Below are positions 981-52,849 of a DNA stretch of 64,000 nucleotides, one piece after another. The notes beneath the pieces were generated by a model. That model had not been told where the DNA came from. It saw nothing but the letters and a program-made list of their open reading frames with translations, and did no database searches. The DNA comes from Phallusia mammillata (lineage: Eukaryota), in assembly GCA_965637545.1 (NCBI GenBank), contig OZ281496.1, positions 11,904,001-11,968,000 on the forward strand. Reading direction: 5' to 3'. Made by a program: the position numbers and the translations under genes. The stretch's first letter is position 1. Each line of letters opens with the position of its first letter.

Positions 981-1067
981 ATCCTATTGTCGACAAAGAA
1001 AATCTAGTTACTAAAAAATAAAAATGTTTCTGCTAATGTTCATGATTACTTTGAAAACAGTCTAGAT

Positions 1068-1260
1068 CAGGGATTCCCAACCGGGGGTACTCGTACCCCT
1101 TGGGGGTACGAGATTGAACATCAAGGGGTAACAAGATCGTTGGGCGACACGGCAGCTTTTTAAACAGATTTTACAGTACAGTTTTATTTTGGTATTGTAA
1201 ACGAAGAATGCTCTGACGTGACAAAGGGGTACGACCAACAAAAAAGGTTGGGAACCCCTG
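1068..1260. mobile_element. hAT (Buster/Charlie-type) MITE
   Basis: TIRs CAGGGATTCCCAACC / GGTTGGGAACCCCTG; perfect 8-bp TSD GTCTAGAT at 1060-1067 and 1261-1268. Confidence 0.9.
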
Positions 1261-2381
1261 GTCTAGATGATGTTTTGACAAGTTAAATTATTATGATGAA
1301 AATCCTTTTTGCAATTTCCATGATTCTTTCAGAGCCAAAACGATTCTTTTCAACACTGAAAAGGATGCAAACTTTTCTAAGGAATACCATTGTTTCCAAA
1401 AGACAGGCGTAAATATGCAGTCTGTTATGAGGATATTTCGTCAAAAGAAAGTTTGGCAATGTATAGCAATGCTTATTCAATTTTGTGATGTTGTAGTTGG
1501 AATAGGTTGGCAATAACTTTTTGTTGTTGAGACTATTGAGTTGCATTTAGTAACCACAACAAAAGCGACACTGACACTTATGGAAATTGCATGTGTGCTG
1601 CAACAATTTGAACTTTCTATCATGACTGTTGTGTGCCAACATGCTGTGTCTTTATTACATGCTGCTTAACAGTTTTATTACCATTGTGAGTTTAGTTCCG
1701 ATATCCGGTAACTCTGTGTTTACCAACAGAGCGTCACAGGATGGATGACGTCATATAGAACAATGGTATTACAGCTTTACAATAAACGCCCATGTCCATA
1801 TTATACTTGTATTGAAGCAAAACGCTCGAAAGAAGCATACACGCGAGTAGTAGCAGAATTTAGAATCTAAAAACTTGTTAGGAAAAGTTTTTTTTTACTT
1901 TTCAATTTTGACGCTTTTTCTGAGAAAGTGAAAACAAGTGTAGACGCGTTATTCAACGTAAAACGTGAAACAAAAAAAATGTTACATTTTGCATTTTCCC
2001 AGGCTAAGTTAAACTTTATTAGCCCGGTGGATTCAAACCTGATGATGCCATACAACTTAGGAGATTCTCGTAGTGGTGATAGTTTACAAGCAGGGGAAGA
2101 TCCCTATTTAGAAGTGGAATTCATTATTTCGAGGGTTCGCGGTCTGTAAGCCAGAATGTGTATTTCAGAAAAACGAAAATTAAAATTGCGCATAACAATG
2201 ATCAAAAGACAGCATGTGACACCACAGACAAGATAAAAAACAACAACATTACAATTGTGCGCAAACAATTGCATTTTTGTTAGTTGTTATGCAATAAAGG
2301 CTATTGGAGACAGTCGATTCTCAATTTTACATTGATTTAAACTGATTCAAAGGCACCAACTGACGCCCAAAAAAATTATAA
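1207..2381 (+). repeat. 1.17-kb direct repeat, copy A (host DNA on the left of endogenous virus 1)
   Basis: Near-identical to 5561-6728, from AATGCTCTGACGTGAC to CCCAAAAAAATTATAA. I saw two differing spots: a short indel near 1926/6278 and CAAC versus AAAA in an A-run near 2240/6590. Confidence 0.95.
2002..2149 (+). other. Probable terminal coding exon of an unidentified host gene (duplicated at ~6348-6495)
   Basis: Pyrimidine tract and CAG acceptor (CATTTTCCCAG|GCT), then open AKLNFISPVDSNLMMPYNLGDSRSGDSLQAGEDPYLEVEFIISRVRGL*; protein family not recognised. Confidence 0.4.
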
Positions 2382-3677
2382 TATATAGTCCGCCATTTTG
2401 ACTATGTCCTCGTCGATTGGCCTCTCCTGCAACAATTCCACCATTACCTCTTTTGCCAACTCTATCATGATCTCGTTCGTTCTTGATCCCTTTATCTCTT
2501 TTTGAGACCCTGTCTCAGGATTTGCCGCATCCTCCGGCCACATTGCCTGAATGAACCTCCGTTTCATAGGCTGGAGATCGCCAAGACTTGCCAATTTGAT
2601 CATTGGGTTTTTCGTATTTGTTGTTATATACGCACATGTCGCCTTGTTGTCTTGGCGATCTCCATGGGTCTTCGCACTCCAGTTAGAGTGATACATAAAT
2701 TTAACTGCTGAGATGAGCGCGTCATTGTTGAAGAAACTTGACCCCGCATCATCTATCTTTAACACCTTATGTTTGTGGCGCAGCGCCATCTGCCCCACTC
2801 CCTGCGAGTCGTTGGTCAAGGTACTCGCATACTCCATGGGGAACAAGAACTGACCTAATAAGGTCTTGCCCTTGCCTGCTGCCCCATGGAGACAGAAGTG
2901 GGGTGCGAAACGGATCCCATCCTGCTCCTCGTTTCGCGCCTCTAGCGCTGCGCACACCAGAGCGATCTTCAGCTCGAACGTGTTAAGCTTCCCCTCGTTC
3001 CACTCTATATGTTTTGCCTGGTTGATGATGTCGTTAATGATCTTACATCCATCTTTTACAGACCATTCCTCGTATTTCTTTTTATTGACTCGCCGGAACG
3101 CCTTCTTCATCTTCCGGTTCGCCTTCCCGAAGCTCACGGTGTTATATGCTCTTTTTGCGAGCGTTTCCGGGAAGGCGAAGTCCTTCTCAAAGAGGCGTTC
3201 CTTGAAGGCATTGCAGCTCGGCTTGGTATCAAACGAGTTTGCTACCTCCTCGGCGATCTTCTGCCAACGGGACTGGTTTCCATATTTGTTTCGCTCGTTC
3301 CCTATTTTTTCTATTAGCTCTGGTGGGATTATAGCTGTCTTTTTGTACATATAACGAATGTACGCATTCATATCCTTGACAGGGGCGATATACAGAACGT
3401 TTATGCCCATGCTTGTCAGGATCCGGGTCACACTTTTCTTGGTTAGCGGCGTTGGCCTGCCACTGCCAGTCTGATTGACACCGATGTATAGCCCATGTCG
3501 GTGGCCCTGGTTGGACTGGCCCCGCTCTGAATTCCCCAGGTAAATTACGCCACTGGGTATTTGGTGGATCCCCTCTACCTCCGACTCTGTTGTAAAGGCC
3601 CACTTTCGCGCGCGATAGTTTGCGTCTTCTTCTTGCGGTAGATTCATCCTTGTATACTTCGAATAGCTCTTGTTCAA
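2376..3677 (-). CDS. rep: Replication initiator: HUH endonuclease plus SF3 helicase (first ATG at 3647)
   Basis: RCR motif I RKWAFT, motif II GHRHG, motif III YIRYMYK; Walker A HGAAGKGKT, Walker B VLKIDD, motif C YITTN, Arg finger PMKRRF; the stop codon lies in the duplicated host flank. Confidence 0.9.
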   Translation of the reverse strand: MNKSYSKYTRMNLPQEEDANYRARKWAFTTESEVEGIHQIPSGVIYLGNSERGQSNQGHRHGLYIGVNQTGSGRPTPLTKKSVTRILTSMGINVLYIAPVKDMNAYIRYMYKKTAIIPPELIEKIGNERNKYGNQSRWQKIAEEVANSFDTKPSCNAFKERLFEKDFAFPETLAKRAYNTVSFGKANRKMKKAFRRVNKKKYEEWSVKDGCKIINDIINQAKHIEWNEGKLNTFELKIALVCAALEARNEEQDGIRFAPHFCLHGAAGKGKTLLGQFLFPMEYASTLTNDSQGVGQMALRHKHKVLKIDDAGSSFFNNDALISAVKFMYHSNWSAKTHGDRQDNKATCAYITTNTKNPMIKLASLGDLQPMKRRFIQAMWPEDAANPETGSQKEIKGSRTNEIMIELAKEVMVELLQERPIDEDIVKMADYIL

Positions 3678-3789
3678 GTAACTTTAACGTAGCGTTATTT
3701 TCAGCAACAGTTTTGTTGATATCAGATTTATAAAAGTTCTTAGCTATACTTTGCACTGTAGACGAAGCAGGTAATTGTTCACTGTACAT
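3229..3789 (-). CDS. 186-aa ORF overlapping the 5' part of rep in another frame (NS2-like arrangement)
   Basis: ATG at 3789 (MYSEQLP...); a counterpart with the same frame offset and similar length is in element 2 (46570-47136). Confidence 0.6.
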   Translation of the reverse strand: MYSEQLPASSTVQSIAKNFYKSDINKTVAENNATLKLLEQELFEVYKDESTARRRRKLSRAKVGLYNRVGGRGDPPNTQWRNLPGEFRAGPVQPGPPTWAIHRCQSDWQWQANAANQEKCDPDPDKHGHKRSVYRPCQGYECVHSLYVQKDSYNPTRANRKNRERAKQIWKPVPLAEDRRGGSKLV

Positions 3790-3835
3790 ATTGTAATGAT
3801 AATAAACACAACGAAACACAACATATATACACTTT

Positions 3836-3891
3836 CGTTGGTACCGGTACCACATCATCGGTACTGATTTTAAGTGGTACCGGTACTAACG
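3836..3891. promoter_or_regulatory. Intergenic stem-loop between capsid stop and ORF3/rep; candidate replication origin
   Basis: Arms CGTTGGTACCGGTACCAC (3836-3853) and GTGGTACCGGTACTAACG (3874-3891): 18 bp with one G-T pair, 20-nt loop; no canonical NANTATTAC. Confidence 0.55.
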
Positions 3892-5361
3892 TGGATTGCA
3901 CAATATAACTTTTGCTGACATGGTGTATGGTATTGTGATATAATTGTCGGTCTTTGTTGCGTATACTTCAGCTCCTGCCGACTCTTGGCTGTACGCCACT
4001 GCACACAGATCCTTTTTGATTGATTCCTCGTATATGTGCATCTGAGTATGCATTAGTTTCCCCGATGGTGGTTTCCCTTGTGTGACATCATACCACGGTG
4101 TTTCATCCATTGTGGATGCCGTGTCATTTGTTGATGTAGAACTTGCAATGCATGTAGTATGCGTGTCCCTTTGGAGGAACTTAATTTTTATCACCGTGTG
4201 GTCATCACCCAGCTGGTATCTTGTCATGTTCGGAAACGATTGAAGCGGAAACTCTGTACTGTCAGTATCGAACACGAGAGTTGACACTTGTCCAAAGTCG
4301 AATTTGTTGTCGTACACCATGCTATCAGTGTCCCAAGCCACGTCCATGTACACCATTGGTAATGTCCTGCCACTATCTTCCTGCCTGTTGAGGCATGCTG
4401 CTGGCCACAGTACAATGTTCCAGTCGGCACACTTAAACATCTCGTACTGCGACCCCATTCCCGTTGCTATTATTTCATTTAGACTGTTGTATGACGTCAG
4501 TCCTTGAGGTCCAAAGACTTTCCATCTTCTTGATGCTACTGATCCTCTGTCCCTGCCTAGGCATAGCTGCCTTGATATGACGTCACTGTGGACTATTGAT
4601 TGGTTTGCTATCGCCGGGTAAGCAACGCCTTCAGCCGTCGTCGTAGACTGCCAGTTGTACCACGGTGCCCAGTTTGTCTGCGGTGCTCCCTTGTAAAACC
4701 AGATGAATCCCTTGGTAACCATGGTGTAGGTACATGTAGGACTAGTTGGGTGCATTCTGGGTATGGCCATGGTACGGGTTCCAGACCTTCCCCCGCCTGA
4801 GTTCCCCGCGACACTTTGTCCAAGCCTTGCTTGTTTGGCAGGAGGGTCTCCTCCTCCTCCTTCATCGTCATACATACTGTCCCCATCATTGAGTTCCATG
4901 TCATCTAATTGACTTGTCGGTGGTGACGTTGCTGAAAAACCTCTTTTCCTCATAGCTCCGTCTGCTGGTATGTTGGTGGAGGTGTTTGGTTCTCCTGCAG
5001 CAGCCTTCTTAAGTTGTCTGTTGCGATTGATCTTCTTAAGCCTTGCCCAATCCTTTTTTTGATTGGGCATCTGAGGTAATACCGCCTTTTTAAGTAAAAA
5101 TATATTGCGCACAGTTGCAGCAGCAGGGCCAGTATGATGAGAAATATCTCGCAGTAAATCGTCGTCTGCAGTATTGTATTGCCAGTATGCACTGTTTCCA
5201 AGCTTCCCGTATTGTTTGTCGTGTTCTCTACACTTTGCATCTAGTTCAGATGTTACTTCTTCCCCTATGCTATTCCCAGGCCCACAATGTGGATGTCCAG
5301 GTATTGTAATACCACCAGTTGCGACCTTCTTAGTCGAGCGCAGCGGCATAATGATCAACAT
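3886..5361 (-). CDS. Capsid protein, 491 aa, with N-terminal parvovirus-type phospholipase A2
   Basis: Ca-loop IPGHPHCGPGN, catalytic DAKCREHDKQY and YNTADDDL; basic patch KKDWARLKKINRNRQLKK; Gly-rich linker and PPAKQARL; beta-rich C-terminal ~300 aa with QYEMFKCADWNIVLWP. Confidence 0.9.
   Translation of the reverse strand: MLIIMPLRSTKKVATGGITIPGHPHCGPGNSIGEEVTSELDAKCREHDKQYGKLGNSAYWQYNTADDDLLRDISHHTGPAAATVRNIFLLKKAVLPQMPNQKKDWARLKKINRNRQLKKAAAGEPNTSTNIPADGAMRKRGFSATSPPTSQLDDMELNDGDSMYDDEGGGGDPPAKQARLGQSVAGNSGGGRSGTRTMAIPRMHPTSPTCTYTMVTKGFIWFYKGAPQTNWAPWYNWQSTTTAEGVAYPAIANQSIVHSDVISRQLCLGRDRGSVASRRWKVFGPQGLTSYNSLNEIIATGMGSQYEMFKCADWNIVLWPAACLNRQEDSGRTLPMVYMDVAWDTDSMVYDNKFDFGQVSTLVFDTDSTEFPLQSFPNMTRYQLGDDHTVIKIKFLQRDTHTTCIASSTSTNDTASTMDETPWYDVTQGKPPSGKLMHTQMHIYEESIKKDLCAVAYSQESAGAEVYATKTDNYITIPYTMSAKVILCNPR
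4950..5240 (-). CDS. 96-aa single-pass membrane protein overprinted (+1 frame) on the PLA2 region
   Basis: TM segment EIFLIILALLLQLCAIYFYL, basic KRRYY..KKR, PPPTY, C-terminus QTEL; same-length homologue at 45243-45533. Confidence 0.75.
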   Translation of the reverse strand: MQSVENTTNNTGSLETVHTGNTILQTTIYCEIFLIILALLLQLCAIYFYLKRRYYLRCPIKKRIGQGLRRSIATDNLRRLLQENQTPPPTYQQTEL

Positions 5362-5370
5362 ATTAATTTT

Positions 5371-5530
5371 ACTTACCTTATATACTTCCTCTTTCTCCTT
5401 TCTCCTATTCTCCTAGTACCAGTACCACTTCTGTGGTACTACTGCTATGTGGTACTGCTTATAACACCCTCTATGTGGTACTGGTACTTCAATATTCTAT
5501 TATATCCATTAACCCATTGATCTAATAGGT
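5371..5530. promoter_or_regulatory. Capsid-upstream region: TATA/donor-like GTATATAAGGTAAGT, reiterated AGTACCAC motifs and inverted repeats
   Basis: Inverted repeat AGTACCAGTACCAC (5415-5428) / GTGGTACTGGTACT (5475-5488); small hairpin AGTACCAC-TTCT-GTGGTACT (5421-5440). Confidence 0.55.
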
Positions 5531-5560
5531 ACCATTATTTGGTACTGTGACGTCAGAATA

Positions 5561-6728
5561 AATGCTCTGACGTGACAAAGGGGTACGACCAACAAAAAAG
5601 GTTGGGAACCCCTGGTCTAGATGATGTTTTGACAAGTTAAATTATTATGATGAAAATCCTTTTTGCAATTTCCATGATTCTTTCAGAGCCAAAACGATTC
5701 TTTTCAACACTGAAAAGGATGCAAACTTTTCTAAGGAATACCATTGTTTCCAAAAGACAGGCGTAAATATGCAGTCTGTTATGAGGATATTTCGTCAAAA
5801 GAAAGTTTGGCAATGTATAGCAATGCTTATTCAATTTTGTGATGTTGTAGTTGGAATAGGTTGGCAATAACTTTTTGTTGTTGAGACTATTGAGTTGCAT
5901 TTAGTAACCACAACAAAAGCGACACTGACACTTATGGAAATTGCATGTGTGCTGCAACAATTTGAACTTTCTATCATGACTGTTGTGTGCCAACATGCTG
6001 TGTCTTTATTACATGCTGCTTAACAGTTTTATTACCATTGTGAGTTTAGTTCCGATATCCGGTAACTCTGTGTTTACCAACAGAGCGTCACAGGATGGAT
6101 GACGTCATATAGAACAATGGTATTACAGCTTTACAATAAACGCCCATGTCCATATTATACTTGTATTGAAGCAAAACGCTCGAAAGAAGCATACACGCGA
6201 GTAGTAGCAGAATTTAGAATCTAAAAACTTGTTAGGAAAAGTTTTTTTTTACTTTTCAATTTTGACGCTTTTTCTGAGAAAAAATGTAGACGCGTTATTC
6301 AACGTAAAACGTGAAACAAAAAAAATGTTACATTTTGCATTTTCCCAGGCTAAGTTAAACTTTATTAGCCCGGTGGATTCAAACCTGATGATGCCATACA
6401 ACTTAGGAGATTCTCGTAGTGGTGATAGTTTACAAGCAGGGGAAGATCCCTATTTAGAAGTGGAATTCATTATTTCGAGGGTTCGCGGTCTGTAAGCCAG
6501 AATGTGTATTTCAGAAAAACGAAAATTAAAATTGCGCATAACAATGATCAAAAGACAGCATGTGACACCACAGACAAGATAAAAAAAAAAAAACATTACA
6601 ATTGTGCGCAAACAATTGCATTTTTGTTAGTTGTTATGCAATAAAGGCTATTGGAGACAGTCGATTCTCAATTTTACATTGATTTAAACTGATTCAAAGG
6701 CACCAACTGACGCCCAAAAAAATTATAA
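5561..6728 (+). repeat. 1.17-kb direct repeat, copy B (includes only the right end of the 1068-1260 MITE)
   Basis: Near-identical to 1207-2381. Confidence 0.95.
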
Positions 6729-7009
6729 GAAGTACTTCGACCTTTCCGCGGTCCCTCAAAATTGCCTCACGGACCCCCAAAAGACTACGGACCCCAGTTT
6801 GAGAACCGCTGATCTAGAGGTTGGCAATTAGTTTAGTAAGAGGCTTGTGTTGGATGGAAGAAGCAGAGTTGTAAGTCGGGCAGGACTTTTCGGGTTTGGG
6901 CCTGGTCCGGGTTAAGTTTTTTCAACAAACGGGCTTGATTCGGGCCTGACTTTATTTGTTAAAGATAGGAGATTTAAATAAGTTTACCATACGAAACAAA
7001 AAGTTACGC

Positions 7010-7250
7010 CACGGTTGTTGTGTTCTGACTACGTGGTGCGTGCCACGGTTTTCGTGTTCTGACTTCGGTGCGTGCCATGGTTTTTGTGTTCTGATTTATG
7101 GGTATGCTACCGTTTTCGTATTTTGACTTGGGGGTGTGCTACGGCTGATGTGTTCTGACTTTGGTGCGTACCCTGGGTAATGTGTTTGAGATAGTTAGGA
7201 TTAGAGACTAGTATAATGTGTTTGAGATAGTTAGGATTAGAGACTAGTAT
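7010..7250. repeat. Degenerate ~30-bp tandem repeats, then a 36-bp tandem duplication
   Basis: Units like GGTTTTCGTGTTCTGACTTCGGTGCGTGCCAC x~5; TAATGTGTTTGAGATAGTTAGGATTAGAGACTAGTA x2. Confidence 0.75.
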
Positions 7251-7281: not shown

Positions 7282-7599
7282 CAGGGGTCGGCAACCACTG
7301 GCACGCGTGCCAAGGTTGGCACGCTAAGTCGTTTTTCATGGCACGCCGAACGATTTGCGTGTTTATATTGAAGTAGCAATTTAACCTGTTACACTGCTTG
7401 TTTATAGTTTGTATATGGCCAGTTTGTATCATGCCAAATTCAGTCTTACATGAACAAAACACTCTGCTTTTTCTTTATTATTGATATCTGCTGGCACGAA
7501 TCACTATCATTTAGAAAAAAACGTTGGCACGCGAGGGCATTGAGGCATGGAAACAACAAGTAAATTGGCACGCGTCGCCTAAAAGGTTGCCGACCCCTG
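7282..7599. mobile_element. hAT MITE
   Basis: Perfect 15-bp TIRs CAGGGGTCGGCAACC / GGTTGCCGACCCCTG; degenerate TSD CTCTAACT / GTCTAAAT. Confidence 0.85.
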
Positions 7600-8019
7600 G
7601 TCTAAATGGTGAAGAATTTGGTTGGAAATGGAACAGTGTAAGACAGGGTTGCACAATATTTGCGCTACGACGGCCATATCGCAGATTCCTATTTCACCAA
7701 CGGCTGGCATTCACCTGCTCGGTTTTGTTTTAAAATCACTGATGTCAAAAAATTGGTTTATATCATATATATACCATCTAATGTAGCCAAAACGCCCCTA
7801 ACTTAATGCACATAATAAGATGCACCGTGTGAAGATCAGTCTTAACCGTTTATTACCCCAGAATCTACATTGTTGCGCTTGTGGTATCTGTTTTTCGCAT
7901 TGTTAGCACACAATAAGCATACAAACAGTCTGATGTATATGCCTACTAAGCTGGTAATACTCTTTTTCAGTACCACAACTCGGTATTGCTGCCAGGCATA
8001 ATATCAAGTTTGTAGAGTT

Positions 8020-9208: not shown

Positions 9209-10744
9209 TTGCTAAATTCAATATGTGATGGAACAATTACGGATCGCATCGGAATACTGGGTGAAATTAATTGTTCCAACATGTTTTCTTGTTTCTCAAA
9301 AGAAAAGATCAACATAAAAAGCATTCAGGTGTGTGACGGAAAAGTGGATTGTGACGACAGCTCAGATGAATTTTTTGAAACCTGTAAACACACCCGTTTT
9401 TATTGCCAAATTAAAGACAAAACTTCTATTGACAGAAAAAAGTTTTGTGACGGAATTATTGATTGTGACAATGAATCCGATGAAAGCAAATGCCGTTGCG
9501 AAGATAAACGATTTTATTGCACAAATAAACAGCCTTTGTCAGTTGAATGGAAATTGGTCCAGAATGGAATTCTGGATTGTTCGGACGGAAGTGATGAATG
9601 TGTAAACTTAGCTGGGGACGCATTTGCAGACGTCAATGAAATGATCGCCAATCCAATATACCGAGCAATTTTCTGGATAACAGCTGTGTTAGCTTTAGGA
9701 GGAAATTTATATGTATTTGTTGCAACTGCTCACAGCTTATGGAATGTTCACAGAAACCAAAACCTTTATATCAGCACCAGCATTTTCATTCTAAATCTCT
9801 GCTGCTCTGATTTTCTCATGGGAATTTATCTACTTACAATTATAATCCAAGGAACTCGATTTTCTGGTTCATACTGTTTGTTTGATAAAAAATGGAGATC
9901 AAGCAGTTTCTGTTCAGGACTTGGAGCACTTGCAATTATTTCTTCGGAGGCATCGGCATTTACGATGACAGCCATGACCACTTTTCGACTTGTATCAGCT
10001 TTTAAACCATTTACAATTCGAAGTGTAGGTGTTCTTAAAGTTTTATTTGCCGAATTGTTTTGCTGGATTTCGGCTGTTGTTTTGGCAACAGTTCCTTTAC
10101 TAAAAGTCACTTCAGAATATTTTACAACTGATGTTTGGTTTCCAAACAACATTATTGGAAATGATTTTGTTTCCAGGGAAAACATATCACTTCTTGCAGA
10201 AAGAATTATTGGTATAAAAACAGAAAGTTGGAACAATGTGAAACGAATTATAGAAATGACATTTCCTCGCAATCCAATCAAAGGGGAGTTAGGATATTAT
10301 GGAGAAACAAGCCTCTGTATGCCACGTTTGTTTGCCGCAACCAGTGAATTTGCTTGGTAATATTCAACTTTCCTTATCACAATCAATCTCCTCATGTTTA
10401 TCTACATGGTGGTTGCATATGTTCTCATCTACAAACAGGGCAACCGCATGAATGGATCCAAAAGCATTGATATCAGTTTCAAGATGCAGAAGAGAATCTC
10501 GAGGTTAATTTTGACCGACTTCTGTTGCTGGATTCCAATTTGTGTCATGGGATATTTAAGTCTTGGAGGAATCAAGATACCACCAGATGCATATGTGTTG
10601 AGTGCTTGTCTGTTGCTTCCAATCAACAGCGCTCTTAATCCCTTACTTTATTCAAAAGAATTAGAGGATTAACTTGCCAGGACAAAGAAATGGCTGGTGG
10701 GGAAATTGCCGTCTTTACGATCATCTACAAATCGGTCATTGTAA
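9209..10744 (+). pseudogene. LDLa-repeat class A GPCR (GRL101/RXFP-like) with two in-frame TAA stops
   Basis: LDLa repeats CDGKVDCDDSSDE, CDGIIDCDNESDE, NGILDCSDGSDE; TM1 WITAVLALGGN, TM2 NLCCSDFLMGIYL, TM6 LILTDFCCWIPI, TM7 LPINSALNPLLY; frame continues through TAA at 10358-10360 and 10670-10672. Confidence 0.85.
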
Positions 10745-12518: not shown

Positions 12519-13490
12519 AAGGGGCGGCTCGTGCTAGGGTGCTGCGGAGCTGCAGCACCCCCTAAATATTTTCACCTAATATTCCTACCACAACAATACA
12601 GATAACTTTCATGATACTTATTTTTTATTCCTGAATAATTTTTTTTATTTCCTGAATAATTTAAGTATAATTTCCGCCTTGATCGGCATTTTTTTTTTTA
12701 AAATTATGCCCTTAATATGTTATCTATGGTGGAACTGCAGCTCCAGATTCGTGACGAATCATGACGTTTTACACTTGTGCGCATGTGCACTTGGAAAAGC
12801 TACATGCCGGGCGAAATAGGCGACTGGGTGCTGCGGCTCGCGCAGCTCCACCAATCACGCAGCGTGTGAACCGGCCGCTGTAGTTGTGTTGTCTGTTTCG
12901 GGTCTATATAGTGCTCCAAAACCAAACCCGTTTGCTATATTCTATGTTCGACAGTGAGTACAGTTAAACATTTTTTTGCCATGTTTTAATTTATTTGTTT
13001 GAATGTTAGTCGTGAATTTTGAGACTGTAAGTGGGCATCAGTTTTTGCAGTTAACATTGAATTGGAAAGTGTATCTAGAAAAAGAGAAAGGTCATCTAAC
13101 ACTTTGAAAAGTCACGATTAACATTTATAATAAAAACCTGAATAAAACGTTAAGAAAACTGGGATAAAACATCTGCTATTCAAAATATGTCATGCAGGAA
13201 TAAGCAACCACAAGAACTATACTCACACTGTGAAGTTAAATGCCTTGCTGAAATTCAGGCAATATTAAATGCAGAACAAACAATTGCACAAGCAACAGGA
13301 ATTTTGAAATACCTTAGTGATGACAATTTCAACCATGTGGAGTTGTGGACAGTATTTGCAACCAAGTACAATCTTGTGTATTGATATAATGGACATGTTA
13401 TGTTTTTTTTAAACAGTAGCTGCTAAATTGCTTCACAAATGTTTCTTAAGAATGAACATTCTACAGGGGAGATAGTAGTGACCACCAAAC
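12519..13490 (+). mobile_element. hAT-derived non-autonomous element; inverse copy at 52850-53722
   Basis: End AGGGGCGGCTCGTGC; ~870 bp colinear with the reverse complement of 52850-53722, which ends GAGCCGCCCCTG. Confidence 0.7.
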
Positions 13491-14139
13491 ATACGGGTCT
13501 GGTGTACTTTCTTGACCAAACGCAATAACTTCCGAACCCTATGACGTAACCTTACGATATTGATATATAATGAACTACGTCACAACCCGGATACGTCACA
13601 CACATCACTATGACGTCATCATAGAATTTTACAGGCCTTCAAAAAAACGCCATTTTGTGAAATACTCATCGTAGCGAGCCCAAACTTTATACATAACGTC
13701 ATCATACCTTCTGATGACGTCATGCAAAAAATGACGTCAATCGCTCATCATTAACACAACTTTTTTACATCTTAAACTAAATTAACCCTGTGACGCGACC
13801 AACGCAATCACAACAGTCGCGTCTCTGCCGTAAAACAGAAGTAAGGTACCATTCAACACAAATTTTACGACAAAACAGTCCTTTTGCCTAAAAGCGTCAC
13901 AACAAAAGCAGTTTTCTCGCCTTTTCTTCTTCTTCTGACATTGACAAATATTATTAATACAAAATATATCATCAAAAACGCTTCATTTTGTAACTAGGCA
14001 TATGATTTCCATGAATCCGCGAATTATGACGATACTGGGTTCCTTTGATCTCTTATATCCCACACGAGCAAAGTACGAAAGAGGCATACACTGAATCCAA
14101 CACTGCAGTTTATGAGCCTACTGGGCAAAAGGCAGAGCG

Positions 14140-16250: not shown

Positions 16251-17563
16251 GCCTCTGAAGGTACAGAAACAAAAAATCGCCCTTAAAAAGGGCACACATT
16301 TTTGCATCACGAATGGCTGGCACCTTGTCGTGGTGTGATCTCACAACGCCTCCGCCAATGGATCTTCTGTCAAAAAATAGATTTTTGTTTTCTGTGTTTT
16401 TATTCGTTTTTGGTTAAATTTATTGACTTATACGCAATGTTCCCATCGACATGGACCCTATATAAAATATAACCGAAATATGGCTAATATAAAACTAAAA
16501 AAACACTATGGCTTTTTTGGCGAAACTAAATATAGTTTTGTAAACAAATCTTTGCATTTATACGAGCCATCACATATTACACGCAATCTTTTTGCCATAA
16601 CAATCTGTTCCAGCAACTTCTAGGTCGTAGAAAATGTATTTTGCATCTTATAACAGCTCAGATCTCGGTTTACTTTTACTGGTAGGAAGATTTTGACTAG
16701 TCCAAAAATTGTCAAAAAGACAAAATAGGGTCACAAGTTGAAAACATGTACATTTCTTACAAATAAGGACAAAAATTTTTTTTTTTTCACATTACTCTAC
16801 AAAATAAGAGCAAATCTAAGAAATAAGAACAGTATGAAAACCCTGCTTACTCTGTAGCAAACAGTATTTGTTTCCGCTTGTCTGTTTTTGCATTTTGTGT
16901 GTGTTACTTTGGCAACAATCAAGATCTTCTGATTAAAAGGTTTATAGACTGTCTGCTCCCAGTTAAAATTAGTAATGTGCGTTCTGCATTTTTAGAATAA
17001 TAAGCTTTCATTTTTTGTTTGAGCCTATATTAATCGCGTTTTCACGTACTATCAGATGTTCCTTTTTTGCACAAACGGCCAAAAACTCAGTTAAAGCTGC
17101 AAACACTACCAAACAAGGCAGATCCTCAATTTGCTGAGAGAGTAGTTTCAATGAATTTACCTAACGACTAACGACATTTCAGCTTTCTTTGCTCCCATGT
17201 TTTGTCATCCGAAACTGTTTCTTAAATCTACAGTACGCCCACAGGCATAACGTTAACGACCGACTTGCGTTTGCTACAAACTTCAAAATTCGCAGCGAAT
17301 CTAAAATTAACAAGTTTAGATGTCCGCCTTTGTGCAGTTTCCTGGCGTACGCTACGTTTCAATTAGAGCACAACTATAAACCCATGTGCAAGGTGTTGTG
17401 ATTGATACCTCAATTTTCCGCATTTTGTTGAAAAATAACATACACATTTTGTTGAAAAATAACATTTATCTTCACATAGTGTAAACATATTTCATCTTGT
17501 TTCACCTGTTGAACGTCCACAACTATGGTGGCCCATCGTTGTCAAATAGTTTTGCATGAAAAA

Positions 17564-18000
17564 AATCGTTTTCATTTTAAAATCGTTTTCATTTTAAAAT
17601 TAATTTCATTTTAAAATCAATTTCATTTTAAAATTAATTTCATTTTAAAATCAATTTCATTTTAAAATCAATTTCATTTTGAAATCAATTTCATTTTGAA
17701 ATCAATTTCATTTTGAAATCAATTTCATTTTGAAATCAATTTCATTTTAAAATCAATTTCATTTTAAAATCAATTTCATTTTAAAATCAATTTCATTTTA
17801 AAATCAATTTCATTTTAAAATCAATTTCATTTTAAAAACGTTTTCATTTTAAAATCAATTTCATTTTAAAATCAATTTCATTTTAAAATCAATTTCATTT
17901 TAAAATCAATTTCATTTTAAAAACGTTTTCATTTTAAAATCAATTTCATTTTAAAATCAATTTCATTTTAAAATCGATTTCATTTTAAAATCAATTTCAA
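17564..18000. repeat. 17-bp minisatellite, ~25 copies, near-palindromic unit
   Basis: Unit AATCAATTTCATTTTAA with variants; flanked by GTGGCCCA(T/G)CGTTGTCAA at 17528, 18016, 18056, 18111, 18151. Confidence 0.95.
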
Positions 18001-44900: not shown

Positions 44901-45133
44901 GAACAGAACGTTTAGCAGCGTACGAATAATGTAACAAAACAGCATAAAGATAAAGGGACGTGTGAGTAGTTAATTGTGTAAAACAAACTCCATATTCTAC
45001 TATCTGGCACTGGCACAACAGTTATTTTTAAGGCGGCACCGCACCAGTAGGATGAGGTAGTGTGTGCAGTGCTGGTGTCAGTGGTGTCAGAAAAGGGTAT
45101 ATGAGGTAAATGAAAAATTATTTAAAAGTCGGA

Positions 45134-46479
45134 ATGCAGTAGAGGTCGACTAGGAAGCTAGCAACTGGTGGTATTACCATACCAGGAAATCCTTATTGTG
45201 GACCAGGAAACCAGATTGGAGAGGAGGTTACCTCTGAACTTGATGCTCAGTGTCGGTAACACGACAAACAGCACTCAGAACTCGGACCCTCAGAGTACTG
45301 GAAGTACAACTCTGCGGATACTAATCTACTCAGAAATATCGCTAATCATACTGGCCCTGCTGCAGCAATTGTGCGCTCTGCTTTTCTATCTAAAAAAGCA
45401 CTATTCCTTTCAATGTCCCCTACAAAGAAGAACTGGGCACGGATTAAGAAGATCCAGGTCTATAGAACATCTGCGGCAGCTGCTGGCGGAGTACCAAGTA
45501 CCTCCTCCACAGTACGTGGAAACGGTAATATGAAAAGGAGATTTAATGCTAATAGTCCACCAACAAGTCAACTTGACGATATGATGCTCGAGGATGGGGC
45601 AGACATTGAAGAATATGAAGAAAACGGAGGAGAACCAGCCGCTATACAATCAAGAATGGGGTACTCAGGTGGTGGGAACTCTGGGGGGATGCAGATCCCT
45701 ATCACGTACCGCACCACTGCCCCATATATCATCCGAATAAATCTGTATTAATGTCCTCGGTTATCGGAAGACAGTGCCATTTAGGAATAGACTGGAGAGG
45801 GACAACATCTGGTAGAAGATGGCGCTTCACGGACAAAGCCGGAATAGGAACGATGAGCCATTCAACCCTCAGTGCAATAACAACCTCGTACGCAACATAC
45901 GAGCTAATCAAGTTCAAAGATTGGACAATGACCATGTGGCCTTGCACCAGTATGAACAGACTCCAAAGCGGAACCTCAGAAGACGGAGGAAACGGAGGGC
46001 GAGCAAGCCCATTAATATACCTGGATGTAGCCTGGGAAAAAGACTCCCTGTTGAAAACCAATTCATGGGACCTGGGATTCATCGATTCCAGTCTGACGGG
46101 AGCTCAGCTGAACAGTTACGAGTTCCCAATGAGCCACAACAACTCCTTAAAAAGGTTCCAACTCGGAGAAGACTTTACGACGATTCCCATCCAATTTTTA
46201 CAACGGGATACCCATACAGTGGGGAGGGTGACGTCGGAAGTGACAGCGGACACAGTGAACACCAATTTCGAGACTCCCTGGTACGACATAACCACATGTC
46301 CAGCACCTTCATCAAAGGCGATGATAACGCAAATGATAGTATATGCGGATTCCATAACCAAAAACCTGCAAGCAAGCACATACCGTCCGACAGCATCGAC
46401 CTATGCAGCCCAAGAAAGCAACTATATCACGATACCTTACACGATGTCAGCAACAATATGCTTATCGTGCCCGAAATAA
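45134..46479 (+). pseudogene. PLA2-bearing capsid pseudogene
   Basis: GGITIPGNPYCGPGNQIGEEVTSELDAQCR*HDK (TAA 45257-45259; TAG 45140-45142); internal deletion and frameshift near 45690-45750; C-terminal part FLQRDTHT, ETPWYD, NYITIPYTMSA matches element 1. Confidence 0.9.
45243..45533 (+). CDS. 96-aa overprinted membrane protein (homologue of 4950-5240), ORF intact
   Basis: MLSVGNTTNST...EISLIILALLLQLCALLFYLKKHY...PPPQYVETVI. Confidence 0.7.
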   Translation: MLSVGNTTNSTQNSDPQSTGSTTLRILIYSEISLIILALLQQLCALLFYLKKHYSFQCPLQRRTGHGLRRSRSIEHLRQLLAEYQVPPPQYVETVI

Positions 46480-46569
46480 ATGTATATTACTTTTGTTTTT
46501 TCGTTTGCATGATTTATGGTTCGTTGTATTTGAGTTTGCATGCACATTAAAAATTTGTTAACCTTACAG

Positions 46570-47136
46570 ATGTTTCCTTGTAAAACAGAGACCGATAAGG
46601 TTATCCATAACTATAGCAAACAAAGTGTATATGAAACAACTGCGGAATATGCAAAACGAAGAGAAAAAGAGTGTGAATGGTATCGAGAGCAATGTCACGG
46701 AAGGTACAAGAAGCAGGAGATGGGCAGTAACAACCGATGTCTTTACCGATGGCGCAAGCAACATCCTTCAAGGCCCAACGTTTGTGTTGTACTGGGGGCC
46801 CAGGGAGCAAGGAAGGTCCGCCAATCATCACAGGCATGGCATATTCAGTTGCACCTGTCAGACGCCAGGTCAACAACCATCGCCCCGGACCAAGAGCGCG
46901 GTTATAAAGCTACTGAAGCAGATGGGAATAACTGTTACTTACATTGCCCCAATAAGGGATATGGCAGCATATGTTCAATATGTTTACAAGAGCGATCGGA
47001 GTGCCATACCAGAAAATCTGAAAGAACTGTGCACAAAACAAAAATACACAAACCGCCAAGGATCAAGCTACTACGAAACAATTGCAAAGGAGGTAGCGAA
47101 ACAGTTTACAACGAAACCAAGCATGAATCAATTTAA
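46570..47136 (+). CDS. 188-aa ORF overlapping rep 5' region (homologue of 3229-3789)
   Basis: Same frame offset to rep; N-terminal KVIHNYSKQSVYETTAE versus SIAKNFYKSDINKTVAE in element 1. Confidence 0.55.
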   Translation: MFPCKTETDKVIHNYSKQSVYETTAEYAKRREKECEWYREQCHGRYKKQEMGSNNRCLYRWRKQHPSRPNVCVVLGAQGARKVRQSSQAWHIQLHLSDARSTTIAPDQERGYKATEADGNNCYLHCPNKGYGSICSICLQERSECHTRKSERTVHKTKIHKPPRIKLLRNNCKGGSETVYNETKHESI

Positions 47137-47707
47137 AGAGGAGCTATACAAAAAGGACTTTTCTTTCCCGGAATTATTAGCTAAACGCGCCTACAATACG
47201 GCACAGTTCAACACGAAACAAAGAAAATTTGCAAAAGTATCAAGGCGAATGAAGGAGAAAGTTAGTCAGAAAATGGATTTAAAAACAGCCAAAGAAATCT
47301 TTATGAAGATCACTAGCCAAGCCAAAAATATAAATTGGCAGAACCAAGACCTAACACCAGAAGACTTGAGGGTTCTATTGATTCAAACGGCATTAGAACT
47401 ACGCAACACCACAAGCGGTGGCATAGAGCTTTCGCCCCATTTTCTCCTGCACGGAGCGGCCGGAAAAGGCAAAACCCTGCTGGGACAGCTGTTGTATCCC
47501 ACAGAGGTAGCCAGCATCCTCACCAACGACAGCCAGGGGGTGGGTCAGATGGCGTTACGCTTCCGTCATAAAATGTTAAAAATCGACGACGACGGTTCCG
47601 CATTCTTTAACAACGATGCGATATTGTCGGCCGTGAAATTTGTAAATATATTGTGTTGTGTTTATCGTTGCATTTATCGTTATATAGTTCGTTTAACACT
47701 TAACTAA
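46625..47707 (+). pseudogene. rep: Rep, truncated after Walker B (homology ends at 47641)
   Basis: RRWAVT, HHRHG, YVQYVYK, HGAAGKGKT, MLKIDD; 56 of 69 residues identical to element 1 from PHF to SAVKF (hand count); lacks motif C and Arg finger. Confidence 0.88.
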
Positions 47708-52810: not shown

Positions 52811-52849
52811 GTTTAGACAAACAGTACATGTCCATTAAATCAAAACACA

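What the first reader, a model, noticed from the sequence alone, without database searches (positions are those of the whole stretch)
4950..5240. Conserved overprinted 96-aa membrane protein with PPxY and C-terminal PDZ-type motif
Seen: both elements have an ATG-started +1-frame ORF of exactly 96 codons over the PLA2 region. Each has N-terminal sequons (NTT, NNT/NST), one TM helix (LIILALLLQLCA..FYL), a basic juxtamembrane stretch, PPPTY/PPPQY, and ends T-E-L / T-V-I. These tail motifs are conserved where the capsid frame is a variable linker, which argues for selection on this frame. Known: ORFs overlapping VP1u (X of B19, SAT of protoparvoviruses) encode small membrane proteins; PPxY binds NEDD4-family WW domains; S/T-x-hydrophobic ends bind class I PDZ domains. 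Inference: an egress, viroporin or FAST-like fusion protein. The element 2 copy (45243-45533) is intact although its capsid is broken.
Basis: partly seen in the sequence, partly recalled or inferred. Interest (0 to 1): 0.82.

Follow-up and report, generated by a model that had tools for sequence, protein, structure and literature searches.

The report
Second gene hidden inside capsid gene
Two diverged parvovirus-like insertions in an animal genome share a 96-codon gene hidden in a second reading frame of their capsid gene; its pattern of substitutions shows it was kept by selection, and it most likely encodes a small membrane protein with a motif that recruits host ubiquitin ligases.

Summary
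Both elements carry an ATG-started ORF of exactly 96 codons: e1 at 5240..4950 on the minus strand, e2 at 45243..45533 on the plus strand. It lies in the +1 frame of the capsid (VP) gene, over the second half of the PLA2 domain and the linker behind it.

It is more than chance. In the overlap, VP third-position differences fall to 0.32, against 0.65 elsewhere. The +1-frame protein is 54% identical, against 15-27% in every control window. Changes that alter VP but are silent in ORF96 are 2.7 times as frequent as changes that alter both frames; the control ratio is 1.15 and a phantom +2 frame gives 0.90. A third lineage, known only as a protein, is biased the same way.

The product is predicted to be a single-pass membrane protein with its N-terminus outside. 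It has a basic juxtamembrane stretch and a conserved PPPxY in the cytosolic tail.

The N-terminal sequons are by-products of the PLA2 catalytic codons. The C-terminus is fixed by a VP-frame ATG. The intact e2 copy is not significant. Nothing supports a FAST-like role.

The closest known kind is the +1-frame VP1u ORFs of vertebrate parvoviruses (X, ARF1, MAAP). This one sits in a different place and adds PPxY, so it is a new variant of a known kind. Expression is untested, and the relatives' DNA was not fetched (referred).

The parts
4950..5240 (-). ORF96 of element 1: 96 codons plus TGA, ATG start, +1 frame of VP (VP codons 41-137)
   Evidence: selection tests
45243..45533 (+). ORF96 of element 2: 96 codons plus TGA, ATG start, same register, 54% identical to the e1 copy
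5091..5147 (-). Predicted transmembrane helix of e1 ORF96 (residues 32-50); it overlies VP codons 72-91, the end of the PLA2 domain
   Evidence: KD19 2.64, the most hydrophobic alternative-frame 19-mer in e1 VP and NS; helix with pLDDT 86-96; coordinates checked
45336..45392 (+). Predicted transmembrane helix of e2 ORF96 (residues 32-50), 15 of 19 residues identical to e1
5031..5090 (-). Basic juxtamembrane stretch of e1 ORF96 (residues 51-70), net +7 over the first 15 residues; implies N-out/C-in topology
4968..4982 (-). PPPTY of e1 ORF96 (residues 87-91), in the predicted cytosolic, disordered tail
45501..45515 (+). PPPQY of e2 ORF96 (residues 87-91); the Pro run is kept through a change that is silent in ORF96 but alters VP
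3886..5361 (-). VP (capsid) gene of element 1, intact, 491 codons from the first ATG. The likely VP1 start is the ATG at 5349, which matches the start of relative P0004. PLA2 domain at residues 17-91, Gly-rich linker, then about 300 residues of putative jelly roll. In-frame Met98 and Met137 are conserved.
2376..3647 (-). NS/Rep gene of element 1, intact, 423 codons from the ATG at 3647. HUH-like, Tyr, and Walker A/B and C motifs are visible. There is no Pfam or PDB sequence hit. The fold model weakly matches HUH Rep nuclease domains.
5378..5384 (-). TATA box 35 nt upstream of the e1 VP1 ATG. The e2 counterpart at 45098-45104 lies 36 nt upstream of its VP ATG. No ATG in any frame lies between the VP1 ATG and the ORF96 ATG in either copy.
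45122..46479 (+). VP gene of element 2, broken: 2 in-frame stops and at least 1 change of frame. It is 58% (N-terminal part) and 41% (C-terminal part) identical to e1 VP.
46625..47707 (+). NS gene of element 2: a 360-codon open frame with no stop in the 307 codons that align to e1 NS (51% identity). The last ~95 residues of e1 NS have no counterpart.
5561..6728 (.). Upstream copy of a 1.17-kb direct repeat flanking element 1 (partner 1207-2381, 99% identical, period 4354), without a credible ORF
1207..2381 (.). Downstream copy of the 1.17-kb direct repeat; it begins within a few bases of the NS stop codon

Best explanation
ORF96 is a genuine overprinted accessory gene of a poorly sampled parvovirus-like virus lineage of animals. 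The window holds two endogenised copies of that lineage.

Shown: the ORF sits in the +1 frame of the VP1-unique region, from just before the PLA2 catalytic residues to a conserved VP-frame ATG. It has been under purifying selection together with VP.

Inferred, translation: it is read from the VP1 mRNA by leaky scanning. Its AUG is the next AUG after the VP1 AUG in both copies. The VP1 AUG lies only ~35 nt behind a TATA box, so it would be at or near the cap. On transcripts that start slightly further downstream, the ORF96 AUG would be the first one.

Predicted, product: a 96-residue single-pass membrane protein. It has a short polar N-terminal tail outside, a helix at residues 32-50 with a conserved Gln and Cys, and a polybasic juxtamembrane stretch inside. 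A short helix follows, then a disordered tail with PPPxY.

Inferred, function: the PPxY binds WW domains of NEDD4-family ubiquitin ligases. This would couple membranes carrying the protein to ubiquitin/ESCRT-dependent sorting. The outcome could be vesicular, non-lytic release of the naked capsids, as with bluetongue virus NS3. It could instead be removal of host membrane proteins, as with the herpesvirus UL56/UL42/U24 group.
For: (1) Both copies have the same ATG, the same length and the same stop, with no gaps, despite 33% nucleotide divergence.

(2) VP third positions differ at 0.32 in the overlap against 0.65 in the controls (Fisher p = 2.5e-9). Flanking VP codons 1-40 give 0.50 and codons 138-180 give 0.57, so the dip coincides with the ORF bounds.

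(3) The +1-frame protein identity is 0.54 in the window starting at VP codon 41, equal to VP itself. It is 0.15-0.27 in all 48 control windows of the VP jelly roll and NS.

(4) Per-site differences by class:
- silent in VP, altering ORF96: 0.46 (controls 0.78);
- altering VP, silent in ORF96: 0.50;
- altering both: 0.18.
The second-to-third ratio is 2.72 (Fisher p = 3.6e-6). The control ratio is 1.15 and a phantom +2 frame in the same stretch gives 0.90. From those counts, my own hand calculation of the difference in log odds ratios gives z of about 3.7.

(5) With the same numbers of differences placed at random, the frame stays open and keeps its ATG in 1.4% of trials. At least 52 identical residues are reached in 0.4%.

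(6) All three antisense frames carry 3-6 stops in both copies.

(7) Third lineage, protein only (P0004). Where its VP differs from e1, the e1 ORF96 residue is still encodable in 45 of 72 positions. That compares with 104 of 268 in the controls (p = 4.6e-4) and 30 of 69 for the +2 frame. There is no forced +1 stop. Met1 and all five PPPxY residues are encodable.

(8) Transmembrane helix, topology and disordered tail.

(9) There is no ATG in any frame in the 106 nt between the VP1 ATG and the ORF96 ATG in either copy. The TATA spacing is conserved.

[quoted passage not shown] PPxY-bearing viral membrane proteins that engage NEDD4 ligases are described in PMC4452911 and PMC5849660.
Against: - Only two DNA sequences could be compared. 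The third lineage is judged from what its protein would allow, not from its DNA.
- There is no evidence of transcription or translation.
- No homologue was found in 5.8 billion or 1.84 billion predicted proteins. Gene callers rarely call nested ORFs, so this says little.
- The ORF96 AUG has a weak context (T at -3, C at +4), and the VP1 AUG has a purine at -3.
- ORF length alone is only marginally unusual, and e1 has a second, non-conserved +1 ORF right behind it.
- PPxY and the C-terminal motif are short. Binding to WW or PDZ domains is untested.
- For B19 X, the best-studied analogue, no translation or essential role has been shown (PMC10891878).
Confidence: 0.62

Rival explanations
1. Nucleotide-level, non-coding constraint. 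The stretch holds a cis-acting element (splicing signal, internal promoter or enhancer for downstream VP or NS transcripts, or a packaging or replication signal). That would suppress synonymous change in VP, and the open +1 frame would be a passenger.
For: Synonymous variation in VP is reduced, which any overlapping function would cause. Parvoviruses pack RNA-processing signals into this part of the genome (PMC12298888). Karlin also found conserved non-coding stretches inside B19 VP1 (PMC10891878).
Against: The signal is frame-specific. Changes silent in the +1 frame are enriched 2.7-fold over changes altering both frames. The same test on the +2 frame gives 0.90, and the controls give 1.15. 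The +1 identity of 0.54 exceeds the +2 identity of 0.39 in the same window. The dip in VP third-position change coincides with the ORF bounds.
Confidence: 0.1
2. Chance ORF preserved by shared ancestry, or a stretch homogenised by gene conversion between the two copies, which lie 40 kb apart.
For: The +1 frame of the VP 5' half is generally poor in stops. An ORF of at least 96 codons arises somewhere in 7.5% of synonymous resamplings, and e1 has a second 98-codon +1 ORF. This is the only stretch where the two elements align at the DNA level by blastn.
Against: Gene conversion would lower divergence at all site classes. Here VP first positions differ as much as in the controls (0.41 against 0.40-0.47), and the class altering VP but silent in ORF96 is at 0.50 against 0.40. 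Random placement of the observed differences keeps the ORF with its ATG in 1.4% of trials. The independent P0004 lineage is biased the same way.
Confidence: 0.07
3. The +1 frame is coding but is not a stand-alone 96-residue protein. It would be an exon or a frameshift product fused to another viral coding segment.
For: A splice-donor-like motif (AG followed by GTAAGT in e1, GTAAAT in e2) is conserved just upstream of VP. Parvoviruses use alternative splicing heavily (PMC12298888). The transcript map of this lineage is unknown.
Against: Both copies have an ATG at the same codon. In e1 the +1 codon directly before it is a stop, so no upstream +1 extension is possible there. No conserved acceptor AG lies directly upstream, since e2 has TTG there. 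The stop is shared.
Confidence: 0.1
4. Real protein with a different job: a membrane-permeabilising or lysis protein (SAT-like or viroporin-like), or a FAST-like cell-cell fusogen. PPxY would be incidental or regulatory.
For: It is a small single-pass protein with polar Gln and Cys kept inside the helix, which could drive oligomerisation, and a polybasic juxtamembrane cluster. SAT of protoparvoviruses is a small ER membrane protein in the +1 frame of VP (PMC10891878, section 4.4).
Against: There is no family hit. The FAST hallmarks are missing: residue 2 is Gln or Leu, so there is no N-myristoylation site, and the N-terminal tail is polar without a hydrophobic patch. The PPPxY is kept in both copies through an ORF96-silent change and is encodable in the third lineage, which argues that it matters.
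Confidence: 0.2
5. Host co-option: the host, rather than the virus, now keeps ORF96, at least in element 2.
For: The e2 copy is intact although e2 VP is broken.
Against: e2 has 3 breaks in about 1.36 kb of VP and none in 0.94 kb of aligned NS. A 291-nt stretch therefore escapes with probability about 0.5-0.7 (my estimate). Most of the e1-e2 divergence bears the mark of selection on VP and NS as well, meaning it arose in replicating viruses.
Confidence: 0.06

Closest known systems
X protein of erythroparvoviruses and ARF1 of tetraparvoviruses (Karlin 2024, PMC10891878)
   Same: An ORF in the +1 frame of VP1 overlapping the PLA2-coding region, with an AUG start. Size is about 80-100 residues. 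[quoted passage not shown] It was detected through reduced synonymous variation in VP1. Expression is unproven.
   Different: In X and ARF1 the transmembrane segment overlies the PLA2 Ca-binding loop and the ORF ends near the catalytic His-Asp. ORF96 starts just before the catalytic His-Asp, its helix overlies the end of the PLA2 domain (VP codons 72-91), and it runs through the linker to a VP-frame ATG. ORF96 has a PPxY tail, which is not described for X or ARF1. No sequence similarity was detected. The host virus lineage is far removed, so an independent origin is likely.
MAAP, the membrane-associated accessory protein of adeno-associated viruses (PMC11359079)
   Same: It is encoded in the +1 frame of the VP1-unique/VP2 region, it is a membrane-associated accessory protein, and it is implicated in capsid egress through vesicles.
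   Different: MAAP starts at non-AUG codons on a spliced mRNA. It has a Thr/Ser-rich disordered part over PLA2 and binds membranes through a C-terminal cationic amphipathic helix, not a transmembrane helix. It has no PPxY. Unlike ORF96, its translation is experimentally proven.
SAT of protoparvoviruses
   Same: A small single-pass membrane protein in the +1 frame of the capsid gene, reached by leaky scanning.
   Different: SAT starts just downstream of the VP2 start, beyond the PLA2 region (PMC10891878, section 4.4). ORF96 ends where a VP-frame ATG (Met137) begins.
Bluetongue virus NS3 (PMC4452911, PMC6949946)
   Same: A non-enveloped virus encodes a small membrane glycoprotein whose cytosolic part carries a PPXY late-domain motif and polybasic motifs. 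It drives non-lytic release through NEDD4/ESCRT partners.
   Different: NS3 has two transmembrane segments, is about 229 residues long, comes from a dsRNA virus, has its own genome segment, and also carries PSAP. There is no homology.
Herpesvirus UL56 / ORF0 / UL42 / U24 group (PMC5849660)
   Same: Small viral single-pass membrane proteins whose cytosolic PPxY motifs recruit NEDD4-family ligases to remodel host membrane proteins.
   Different: They are tail-anchored (type II), with the PPxY N-terminal to the helix. ORF96 has the opposite order, with the helix first and PPxY at the C-terminus. There is no Pfam hit.

Membership tests
X/ARF1-type +1-frame ORFs over PLA2 (Parvovirinae) | ORF in the +1 frame of VP1 overlapping the PLA2-coding region | tested here: met
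   Frame offset is 121 nt = +1. ORF96 covers VP codons 41-137 and Pfam places PLA2 at VP residues 17-91.
X/ARF1-type +1-frame ORFs over PLA2 (Parvovirinae) | Significantly reduced synonymous variability of VP1 across the overlap | tested here: met
   Third-position differences are 0.32 against 0.65 (p = 2.5e-9). Synonymous differences in identical-residue codons are 0.39 against 0.60 (p = 0.007). Only two sequences were compared.
X/ARF1-type +1-frame ORFs over PLA2 (Parvovirinae) | Central transmembrane segment followed by a positively charged cytosolic region | tested here: met
   KD19 is 2.64 and 2.30 at residues 32-50; net charge is +7 and +4 in the next 15 residues; AF2 predicts a helix.
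X/ARF1-type +1-frame ORFs over PLA2 (Parvovirinae) | The transmembrane segment overlies the PLA2 Ca-binding loop, and the conserved residues align on the VP1 alignment | tested here: not met
   The Ca-binding loop is at VP residues 25-30, upstream of the ORF96 ATG, and e1 has +1 stops there. The ORF96 helix overlies VP codons 72-91.
X/ARF1-type +1-frame ORFs over PLA2 (Parvovirinae) | Detectable sequence similarity to X or ARF1 | tested here: inconclusive
No hit for ORF96 or its two-sequence profile in the protein libraries or Pfam. Whether X or ARF1 are in those libraries is unknown.
MAAP (Dependoparvovirus) | Non-AUG start; Thr/Ser-rich disordered part over PLA2; C-terminal cationic amphipathic helix as the membrane anchor | tested here: not met
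   ORF96 has an AUG start, a true hydrophobic helix and a PPxY tail. The +1 frame over VP1u is shared.
SAT (Protoparvovirus) | Starts a few nucleotides downstream of the VP2 start, beyond PLA2 | tested here: not met
   ORF96 ends at the VP-frame ATG of codon 137 and starts inside PLA2.
FAST proteins (fusogenic reoviruses) | Small N-out/C-in single-pass protein with a polybasic cluster | tested here: met
   Prediction only.
FAST proteins (fusogenic reoviruses) | N-terminal acylation site or an ectodomain hydrophobic patch or fusion loop; a family profile hit | tested here: not met
   Residue 2 is Gln or Leu. The N-terminal tail (residues 1-31) is rich in Thr, Asn, Ser and Gln. There is no Pfam hit at E <= 1 apart from a sub-threshold DUF2569 match.
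FAST proteins (fusogenic reoviruses) | Induces cell-cell fusion | not testable with these tools
   No assay is available here.
Viral PPxY membrane adaptors of NEDD4-family ligases (functional class) | PPxY located in a cytosol-facing, accessible segment and conserved among relatives | tested here: met
   PPPTY and PPPQY at residues 87-91 lie in the disordered tail on the positive-inside side. They are kept through an ORF96-silent change and are encodable in P0004.
Viral PPxY membrane adaptors of NEDD4-family ligases (functional class) | Binds WW domains of NEDD4-family ligases | not testable with these tools
   Not tested.
Class I PDZ-binding C-terminus | C-terminal [S/T]-x-hydrophobic | tested here: met
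   TEL and TVI. This is a three-residue pattern. The Thr and the position of the end are imposed by VP codons, so it carries little weight. Binding was not tested.
Parvoviridae (the carrier element) | PLA2 domain in the N-terminal unique part of the capsid protein | tested here: met
   PF08398, E 1.4e-10. PDB hits to AAV VP1 cover the N-terminal region only (E 8.5e-8).
Parvoviridae (the carrier element) | NS1/Rep with recognisable parvoviral SF3 helicase and nuclease domains | tested here: inconclusive
   There is no Pfam or PDB sequence hit, even with a 4-sequence profile. The motifs are visible by eye. The AF2 model (pLDDT 62) weakly matches HUH Rep nuclease domains, best among circular ssDNA virus Reps.
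Parvoviridae (the carrier element) | Linear genome with NS upstream of VP (or ambisense) and terminal hairpins | tested here: not met
   Both elements have VP upstream of NS on one strand. e1 is a head-to-tail copy of more than one unit with period 4354. No terminal hairpins were found. The only strong hairpin is internal, at 3836-3891.

The most novel reading that the evidence does not exclude
A deep-branching parvovirus-like lineage has independently evolved, by overprinting its PLA2/linker region, a late-domain (PPxY) membrane protein. The lineage has VP ahead of NS, possibly a circular or head-to-tail replicating genome, and a Rep with no detectable sequence similarity to parvoviral NS1. 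A naked ssDNA virus would thereby tap NEDD4/ESCRT-dependent vesicular release. Repeated birth of small membrane proteins in the +1 frame of VP1u would then be a general rule of this virus group rather than a peculiarity of a few vertebrate genera.
Probability: 0.2. Interest if true: 0.75.

Novelty: new variant of a known kind. Interest (0 to 1): 0.55.

Why it matters
Small membrane proteins hidden in the +1 frame of the VP1-unique region are known or predicted in several vertebrate parvovirus genera (X, ARF1, MAAP). Their origin and purpose are unsettled.

This case comes from a lineage so distant that its replicase has no detectable sequence match. The ORF sits in a different place on PLA2 and carries a recognisable host-interaction motif (PPxY). 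Two things follow:
- it argues for repeated, convergent birth of such genes;
- it gives a concrete hypothesis for what they do, namely coupling to NEDD4/ESCRT-type sorting.

It also shows that endogenous copies can be used to find overlapping genes in viruses that have never been isolated.

Tried and rejected
- Word-indexed search of ORF96 against 5.8 billion proteins: no candidate.
- Exhaustive HMMER search with the two-copy profile against 1.84 billion representatives: zero hits.
- Pfam on both copies: only a sub-threshold DUF2569 match for e1.
- ORF length as the main argument: rejected as weak.
- Antisense coding as the source of the periodic signal: rejected, since all three antisense frames carry 3-6 stops in both copies.
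- Gene conversion: rejected on the site-class pattern.
- The second +1 ORF of e1 (4904..4608) and the ORFs overlapping the NS N-terminus (e1 3858..3229, e2 46540..47136): not conserved, or only 23-24% identical. I used them as negative controls.
- NS against Pfam and PDB by sequence, alone and as a 4-sequence profile: nothing.
- Rfam on the whole window: nothing.
- Search for an e2 counterpart of the e1 hairpin: none.
- Literature search for a parvovirus accessory protein with PPxY: none found.
- Fold search with the ORF96 model: not run, because a lone helix gives meaningless matches.
- The finding's X-of-B19 and SAT comparators: not tested by sequence, because no tool returned them and fetching them is barred.
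Full report
WHAT IS THERE

The window is animal DNA. It holds an LDLa plus rhodopsin-type receptor ORF, an alpha-kinase ORF, and hAT and integrase fragments. None of it looked human. It carries two parvovirus-like insertions.

Element 1 (e1) lies on the minus strand:
- An intact 491-codon capsid gene (VP, 5361..3886). It has a PLA2 domain at residues 17-91 (Pfam PF08398, E 1.4e-10). PDB matches to AAV VP1 are confined to the N-terminal region.
- An intact replicase gene (NS, ATG at 3647, stop at 2376).

Element 2 (e2) lies on the plus strand with the same order, VP (45122-46479) then NS (46625-47707). Protein identity to e1 is 41-58%.
- The e2 VP gene is broken by 2 in-frame stops and at least 1 change of frame.
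- The e2 NS gene has no stop in the 307 codons that align.

THE OBSERVATION

Both elements carry an ATG-started ORF of exactly 96 codons, ending in TGA, in the +1 frame of VP. The coordinates are e1 5240..4950 (minus) and e2 45243..45533 (plus). The two products align without gaps, and 52 of 96 residues are identical. The ORF covers VP codons 41-137. That is the second half of the PLA2 domain, from just before the catalytic His-Asp, plus the basic linker.

Three of them have trivial causes:
- The N-terminal sequons are simply the +1 reading of the invariant PLA2 catalytic codons.
- The stop codon is created by a VP-frame ATG (Met137) plus the following base.
- The Thr at -2 of the C-terminus is imposed by VP codons.

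IS IT MORE THAN CHANCE?

Length alone is weak evidence. With VP's amino acids held fixed and synonymous codons resampled, an ATG ORF of at least 96 codons appears somewhere in the +1 frame in 7.5% of trials, and in 1% under codon permutation. This particular stretch stays open in 0.36% of trials.

The substitution pattern between the two copies is the real evidence.

(a) VP third positions differ at 0.32 inside the overlap. They differ at 0.50 and 0.57 in the flanking VP codons, and at 0.65-0.67 in the jelly roll and NS (p = 2.5e-9).

(b) In sliding 96-codon windows, +1-frame identity peaks at 0.54 exactly at VP codon 41, equal to VP's own identity. It is 0.15-0.27 in all control windows.

(c) I classified every difference by its effect in both frames.

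| Class of change | Overlap | Controls |
|---|---|---|
| Silent in VP, altering ORF96 | 0.46 | 0.78 |
| Altering VP, silent in ORF96 | 0.50 | 0.40 |
| Altering both | 0.18 | 0.35 |

- The ratio of the second class to the third is 2.72 in the overlap (Fisher p = 3.6e-6).
- The ratio is 1.15 in the controls, and 0.90 for a phantom +2 frame in the same stretch.
- From those counts, my own hand calculation puts the two odds ratios about 3.7 standard errors apart.
- In the C-terminal half, ORF96-silent changes are the commonest class (0.59). There the +1 frame seems the more constrained of the two.

(d) Placing the observed numbers of differences at random keeps the frame open with its ATG in 1.4% of trials. 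At least 52 identities are reached in 0.4%.

(e) All three antisense frames carry 3-6 stops in both copies.

(f) Gene conversion does not fit, because VP first positions are as diverged as elsewhere.

A THIRD LINEAGE, WITHOUT ITS DNA

Protein searches found only three NS relatives and one VP relative (P0001-P0004). All are unnamed and come from small assemblies.

For P0004 (41% identical VP) I counted positions where its VP residues differ from e1. At each I asked whether the e1 ORF96 residue could still be encoded in the +1 frame.
- It could in 45 of 72 positions.
- The controls gave 104 of 268 (p = 4.6e-4), and the +2 frame gave 30 of 69.
- No +1 stop is forced.
- Met1 and all five PPPxY residues are encodable.

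This shows compatibility, not that the ORF exists there. It is, however, an independent bias in the expected direction.

THE PRODUCT

Residues 32-50 form the most hydrophobic alternative-frame 19-mer in all of e1 VP and NS (Kyte-Doolittle 2.64; 2.30 in e2). The next 15 residues carry net +7 (e1) and +4 (e2), and the N-terminal flank is neutral to acidic. This predicts the N-terminus outside and the C-terminus in the cytosol.

AlphaFold2 gives a confident helix (pLDDT 86-96 over residues 21-50), a short second helix at 72-83, and a disordered tail.

PPPTY / PPPQY sits in that tail. Its Pro run differs between the copies by a change that is silent in ORF96 but alters VP.

HOW IT COULD BE MADE

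In both copies there is no ATG in any frame in the 106 nt between the VP1 ATG (e1 5349, e2 45134) and the ORF96 ATG. A TATA or TATA-like box lies 35 and 36 nt upstream of the VP1 ATG. I infer that the VP1 AUG is at or near the cap and is easily bypassed. ORF96 would then be the next AUG, or the first one.

The ORF96 AUG itself has a weak context, which would let ribosomes go on to the conserved VP-frame Met98 and Met137. In e1 the +1 codon just before the ATG is a stop, which excludes an upstream extension there.

WHAT IT MOST LIKELY DOES

This part is inference. The protein would be a membrane adaptor that brings NEDD4-family ligases, through PPxY, to membranes. The outcome could be vesicular release of the naked capsid; bluetongue virus NS3 is the working model (PMC4452911, PMC6949946). 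It could instead be removal of host surface proteins, as with the herpesvirus UL56 group (PMC5849660).

A lytic or viroporin role like SAT remains possible. A FAST-like fusogen is not supported. The PDZ-type ending carries almost no information.

COMPARISON WITH WHAT IS KNOWN

Karlin (PMC10891878) showed that X of erythroparvoviruses and ARF1 of tetraparvoviruses lie in the +1 frame over PLA2 and show reduced synonymous variation. [quoted passage not shown] MAAP of AAV occupies the same frame and region but has no transmembrane helix (PMC11359079).

ORF96 belongs to this kind of gene but is not a member of those families:
- Its helix overlies the end of PLA2, not the Ca-binding loop.
- The ORF begins roughly where X ends.
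- It adds a PPxY tail.
- No similarity is detectable.
- I found no paper linking PPxY to a parvovirus accessory protein.

The verdict is a new variant of a known kind, probably of independent origin.

THE CARRIER ELEMENT IS ITSELF ODD

- VP precedes NS in both copies.
- e1 is flanked by 99%-identical 1.17-kb direct repeats with period 4354. This is a head-to-tail copy of more than one unit.
- A strong hairpin (3836-3891, z = -6.4) sits between VP and NS. It shares a GGTACC/GTACCAC motif with repeats upstream of VP.
- NS has no Pfam or PDB sequence match, even as a profile.
- The NS fold model (pLDDT 62) weakly matches HUH Rep nuclease domains.

LIMITS AND COMPLIANCE

Only two DNA copies were compared, and expression is untested.

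The step is referred.

Queries to e2 stayed within single-frame pieces.

Slips I noticed:
- One script printed, as a by-product, how many VP-frame stops of e2 fall inside the 291-nt ORF96 stretch. That is more than a bare total. I neither use nor repeat it.

Noticed in passing
window 1207-2381 and 5561-6728: Element 1 is bracketed by 1.17-kb direct repeats, 99% identical, with period 4354 and no credible ORF. The inner repeat starts within a few bases of the NS stop. Weak similarity continues ~30 nt beyond 1207 into what matches the region upstream of VP. It looks like a head-to-tail copy of more than one unit, or the integration of a circular form.
   Followed up: partly
window 5361..2376 (-) and 45122..47707 (+): In both elements VP lies upstream of NS on the same strand, with a spacer of only ~150-240 nt (stop to ATG or frame start). 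This is not the usual parvovirus order.
   Followed up: partly
window 3836-3891; 5400-5540: A strong hairpin with 18-nt arms (DNA fold z = -6.4) lies between the VP stop and NS. Its arms carry GGTACC/GTACCAC, and the same motif is repeated about five times upstream of the VP TATA box. These may be replicase-binding or origin-like sites. e2 has GGCAC/GGTGTCAG-type repeats upstream of VP but no comparable hairpin.
   Followed up: partly
window 5371-5384 (-) and 45098-45111 (+): A TATA or TATA-like box is immediately followed by a splice-donor-like motif (AG then GTAAGT in e1, GTAAAT in e2). It is conserved in both elements just upstream of VP.
   Followed up: no
window 3858..3229 (-) and 46540..47136 (+): Both elements have a ~200-codon ATG ORF overlapping the NS N-terminus in another frame, but the products are only 23-24% identical. 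It looks unselected and served as a negative control for ORF96.
   Followed up: yes
window 4904..4608 (-); 45819..46550 (+): e1 has a second 98-codon +1 ORF right after ORF96, over the Gly-rich linker. e2 has a 243-codon ORF in the +2 frame of the jelly roll. Neither has a counterpart in the other element.
   Followed up: yes
window 5068-5070 and 4951-4953 (-): The VP-frame Met98 is conserved in e1, e2 and P0004. Met137 is conserved in e1 and e2 and creates the ORF96 stop. Both are candidate starts of shorter capsid proteins.
   Followed up: no
window 2376-3647 (-): The NS protein has visible HUH-like, Tyr, and Walker A/B and C motifs. It has no Pfam or PDB sequence match, even as a 4-sequence profile. 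Its fold model best matches the nuclease domains of circular ssDNA virus and plasmid Reps, and only weakly.
   Followed up: partly
ORF96 residues 77-81 (window ~4998-5012 (-), ~45471-45485 (+)): A conserved L-x-x-L-L pattern lies inside the short second helix of the tail (LRRLL / LRQLL). It may be a sorting or interaction motif.
   Followed up: no
window 1061-1088, 1242-1272, 5596-5626, 6793-6823, 7581-7611: A ~30-nt motif recurs inside the ends of the e1 repeats and in the host flanks on both sides, once inverted. This suggests that a dispersed host repeat, and so possibly host DNA, forms part of the 1.17-kb repeat.
   Followed up: no
window 7008-7250; 17562-18177: Tandem arrays: 32-nt and 36-nt units next to element 1, and an array of ~51-nt-offset copies at 17.5-18.2 kb.
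   Followed up: no
window 9209-10360 (+), 19371-20615 (-), 20775-22025 (-), 30020-30646 (-), 60473-62272 (-): Host or transposon ORFs: LDLa repeats plus a rhodopsin-type 7TM, an integrase core, an alpha-kinase, a hAT dimerisation domain, and a 599-codon ORF with a faint DUF4371 match. Diverged repeat pairs lie at 12520-13417 / 52807-53722 and 13494-13849 / 22588-22950.
   Followed up: partly
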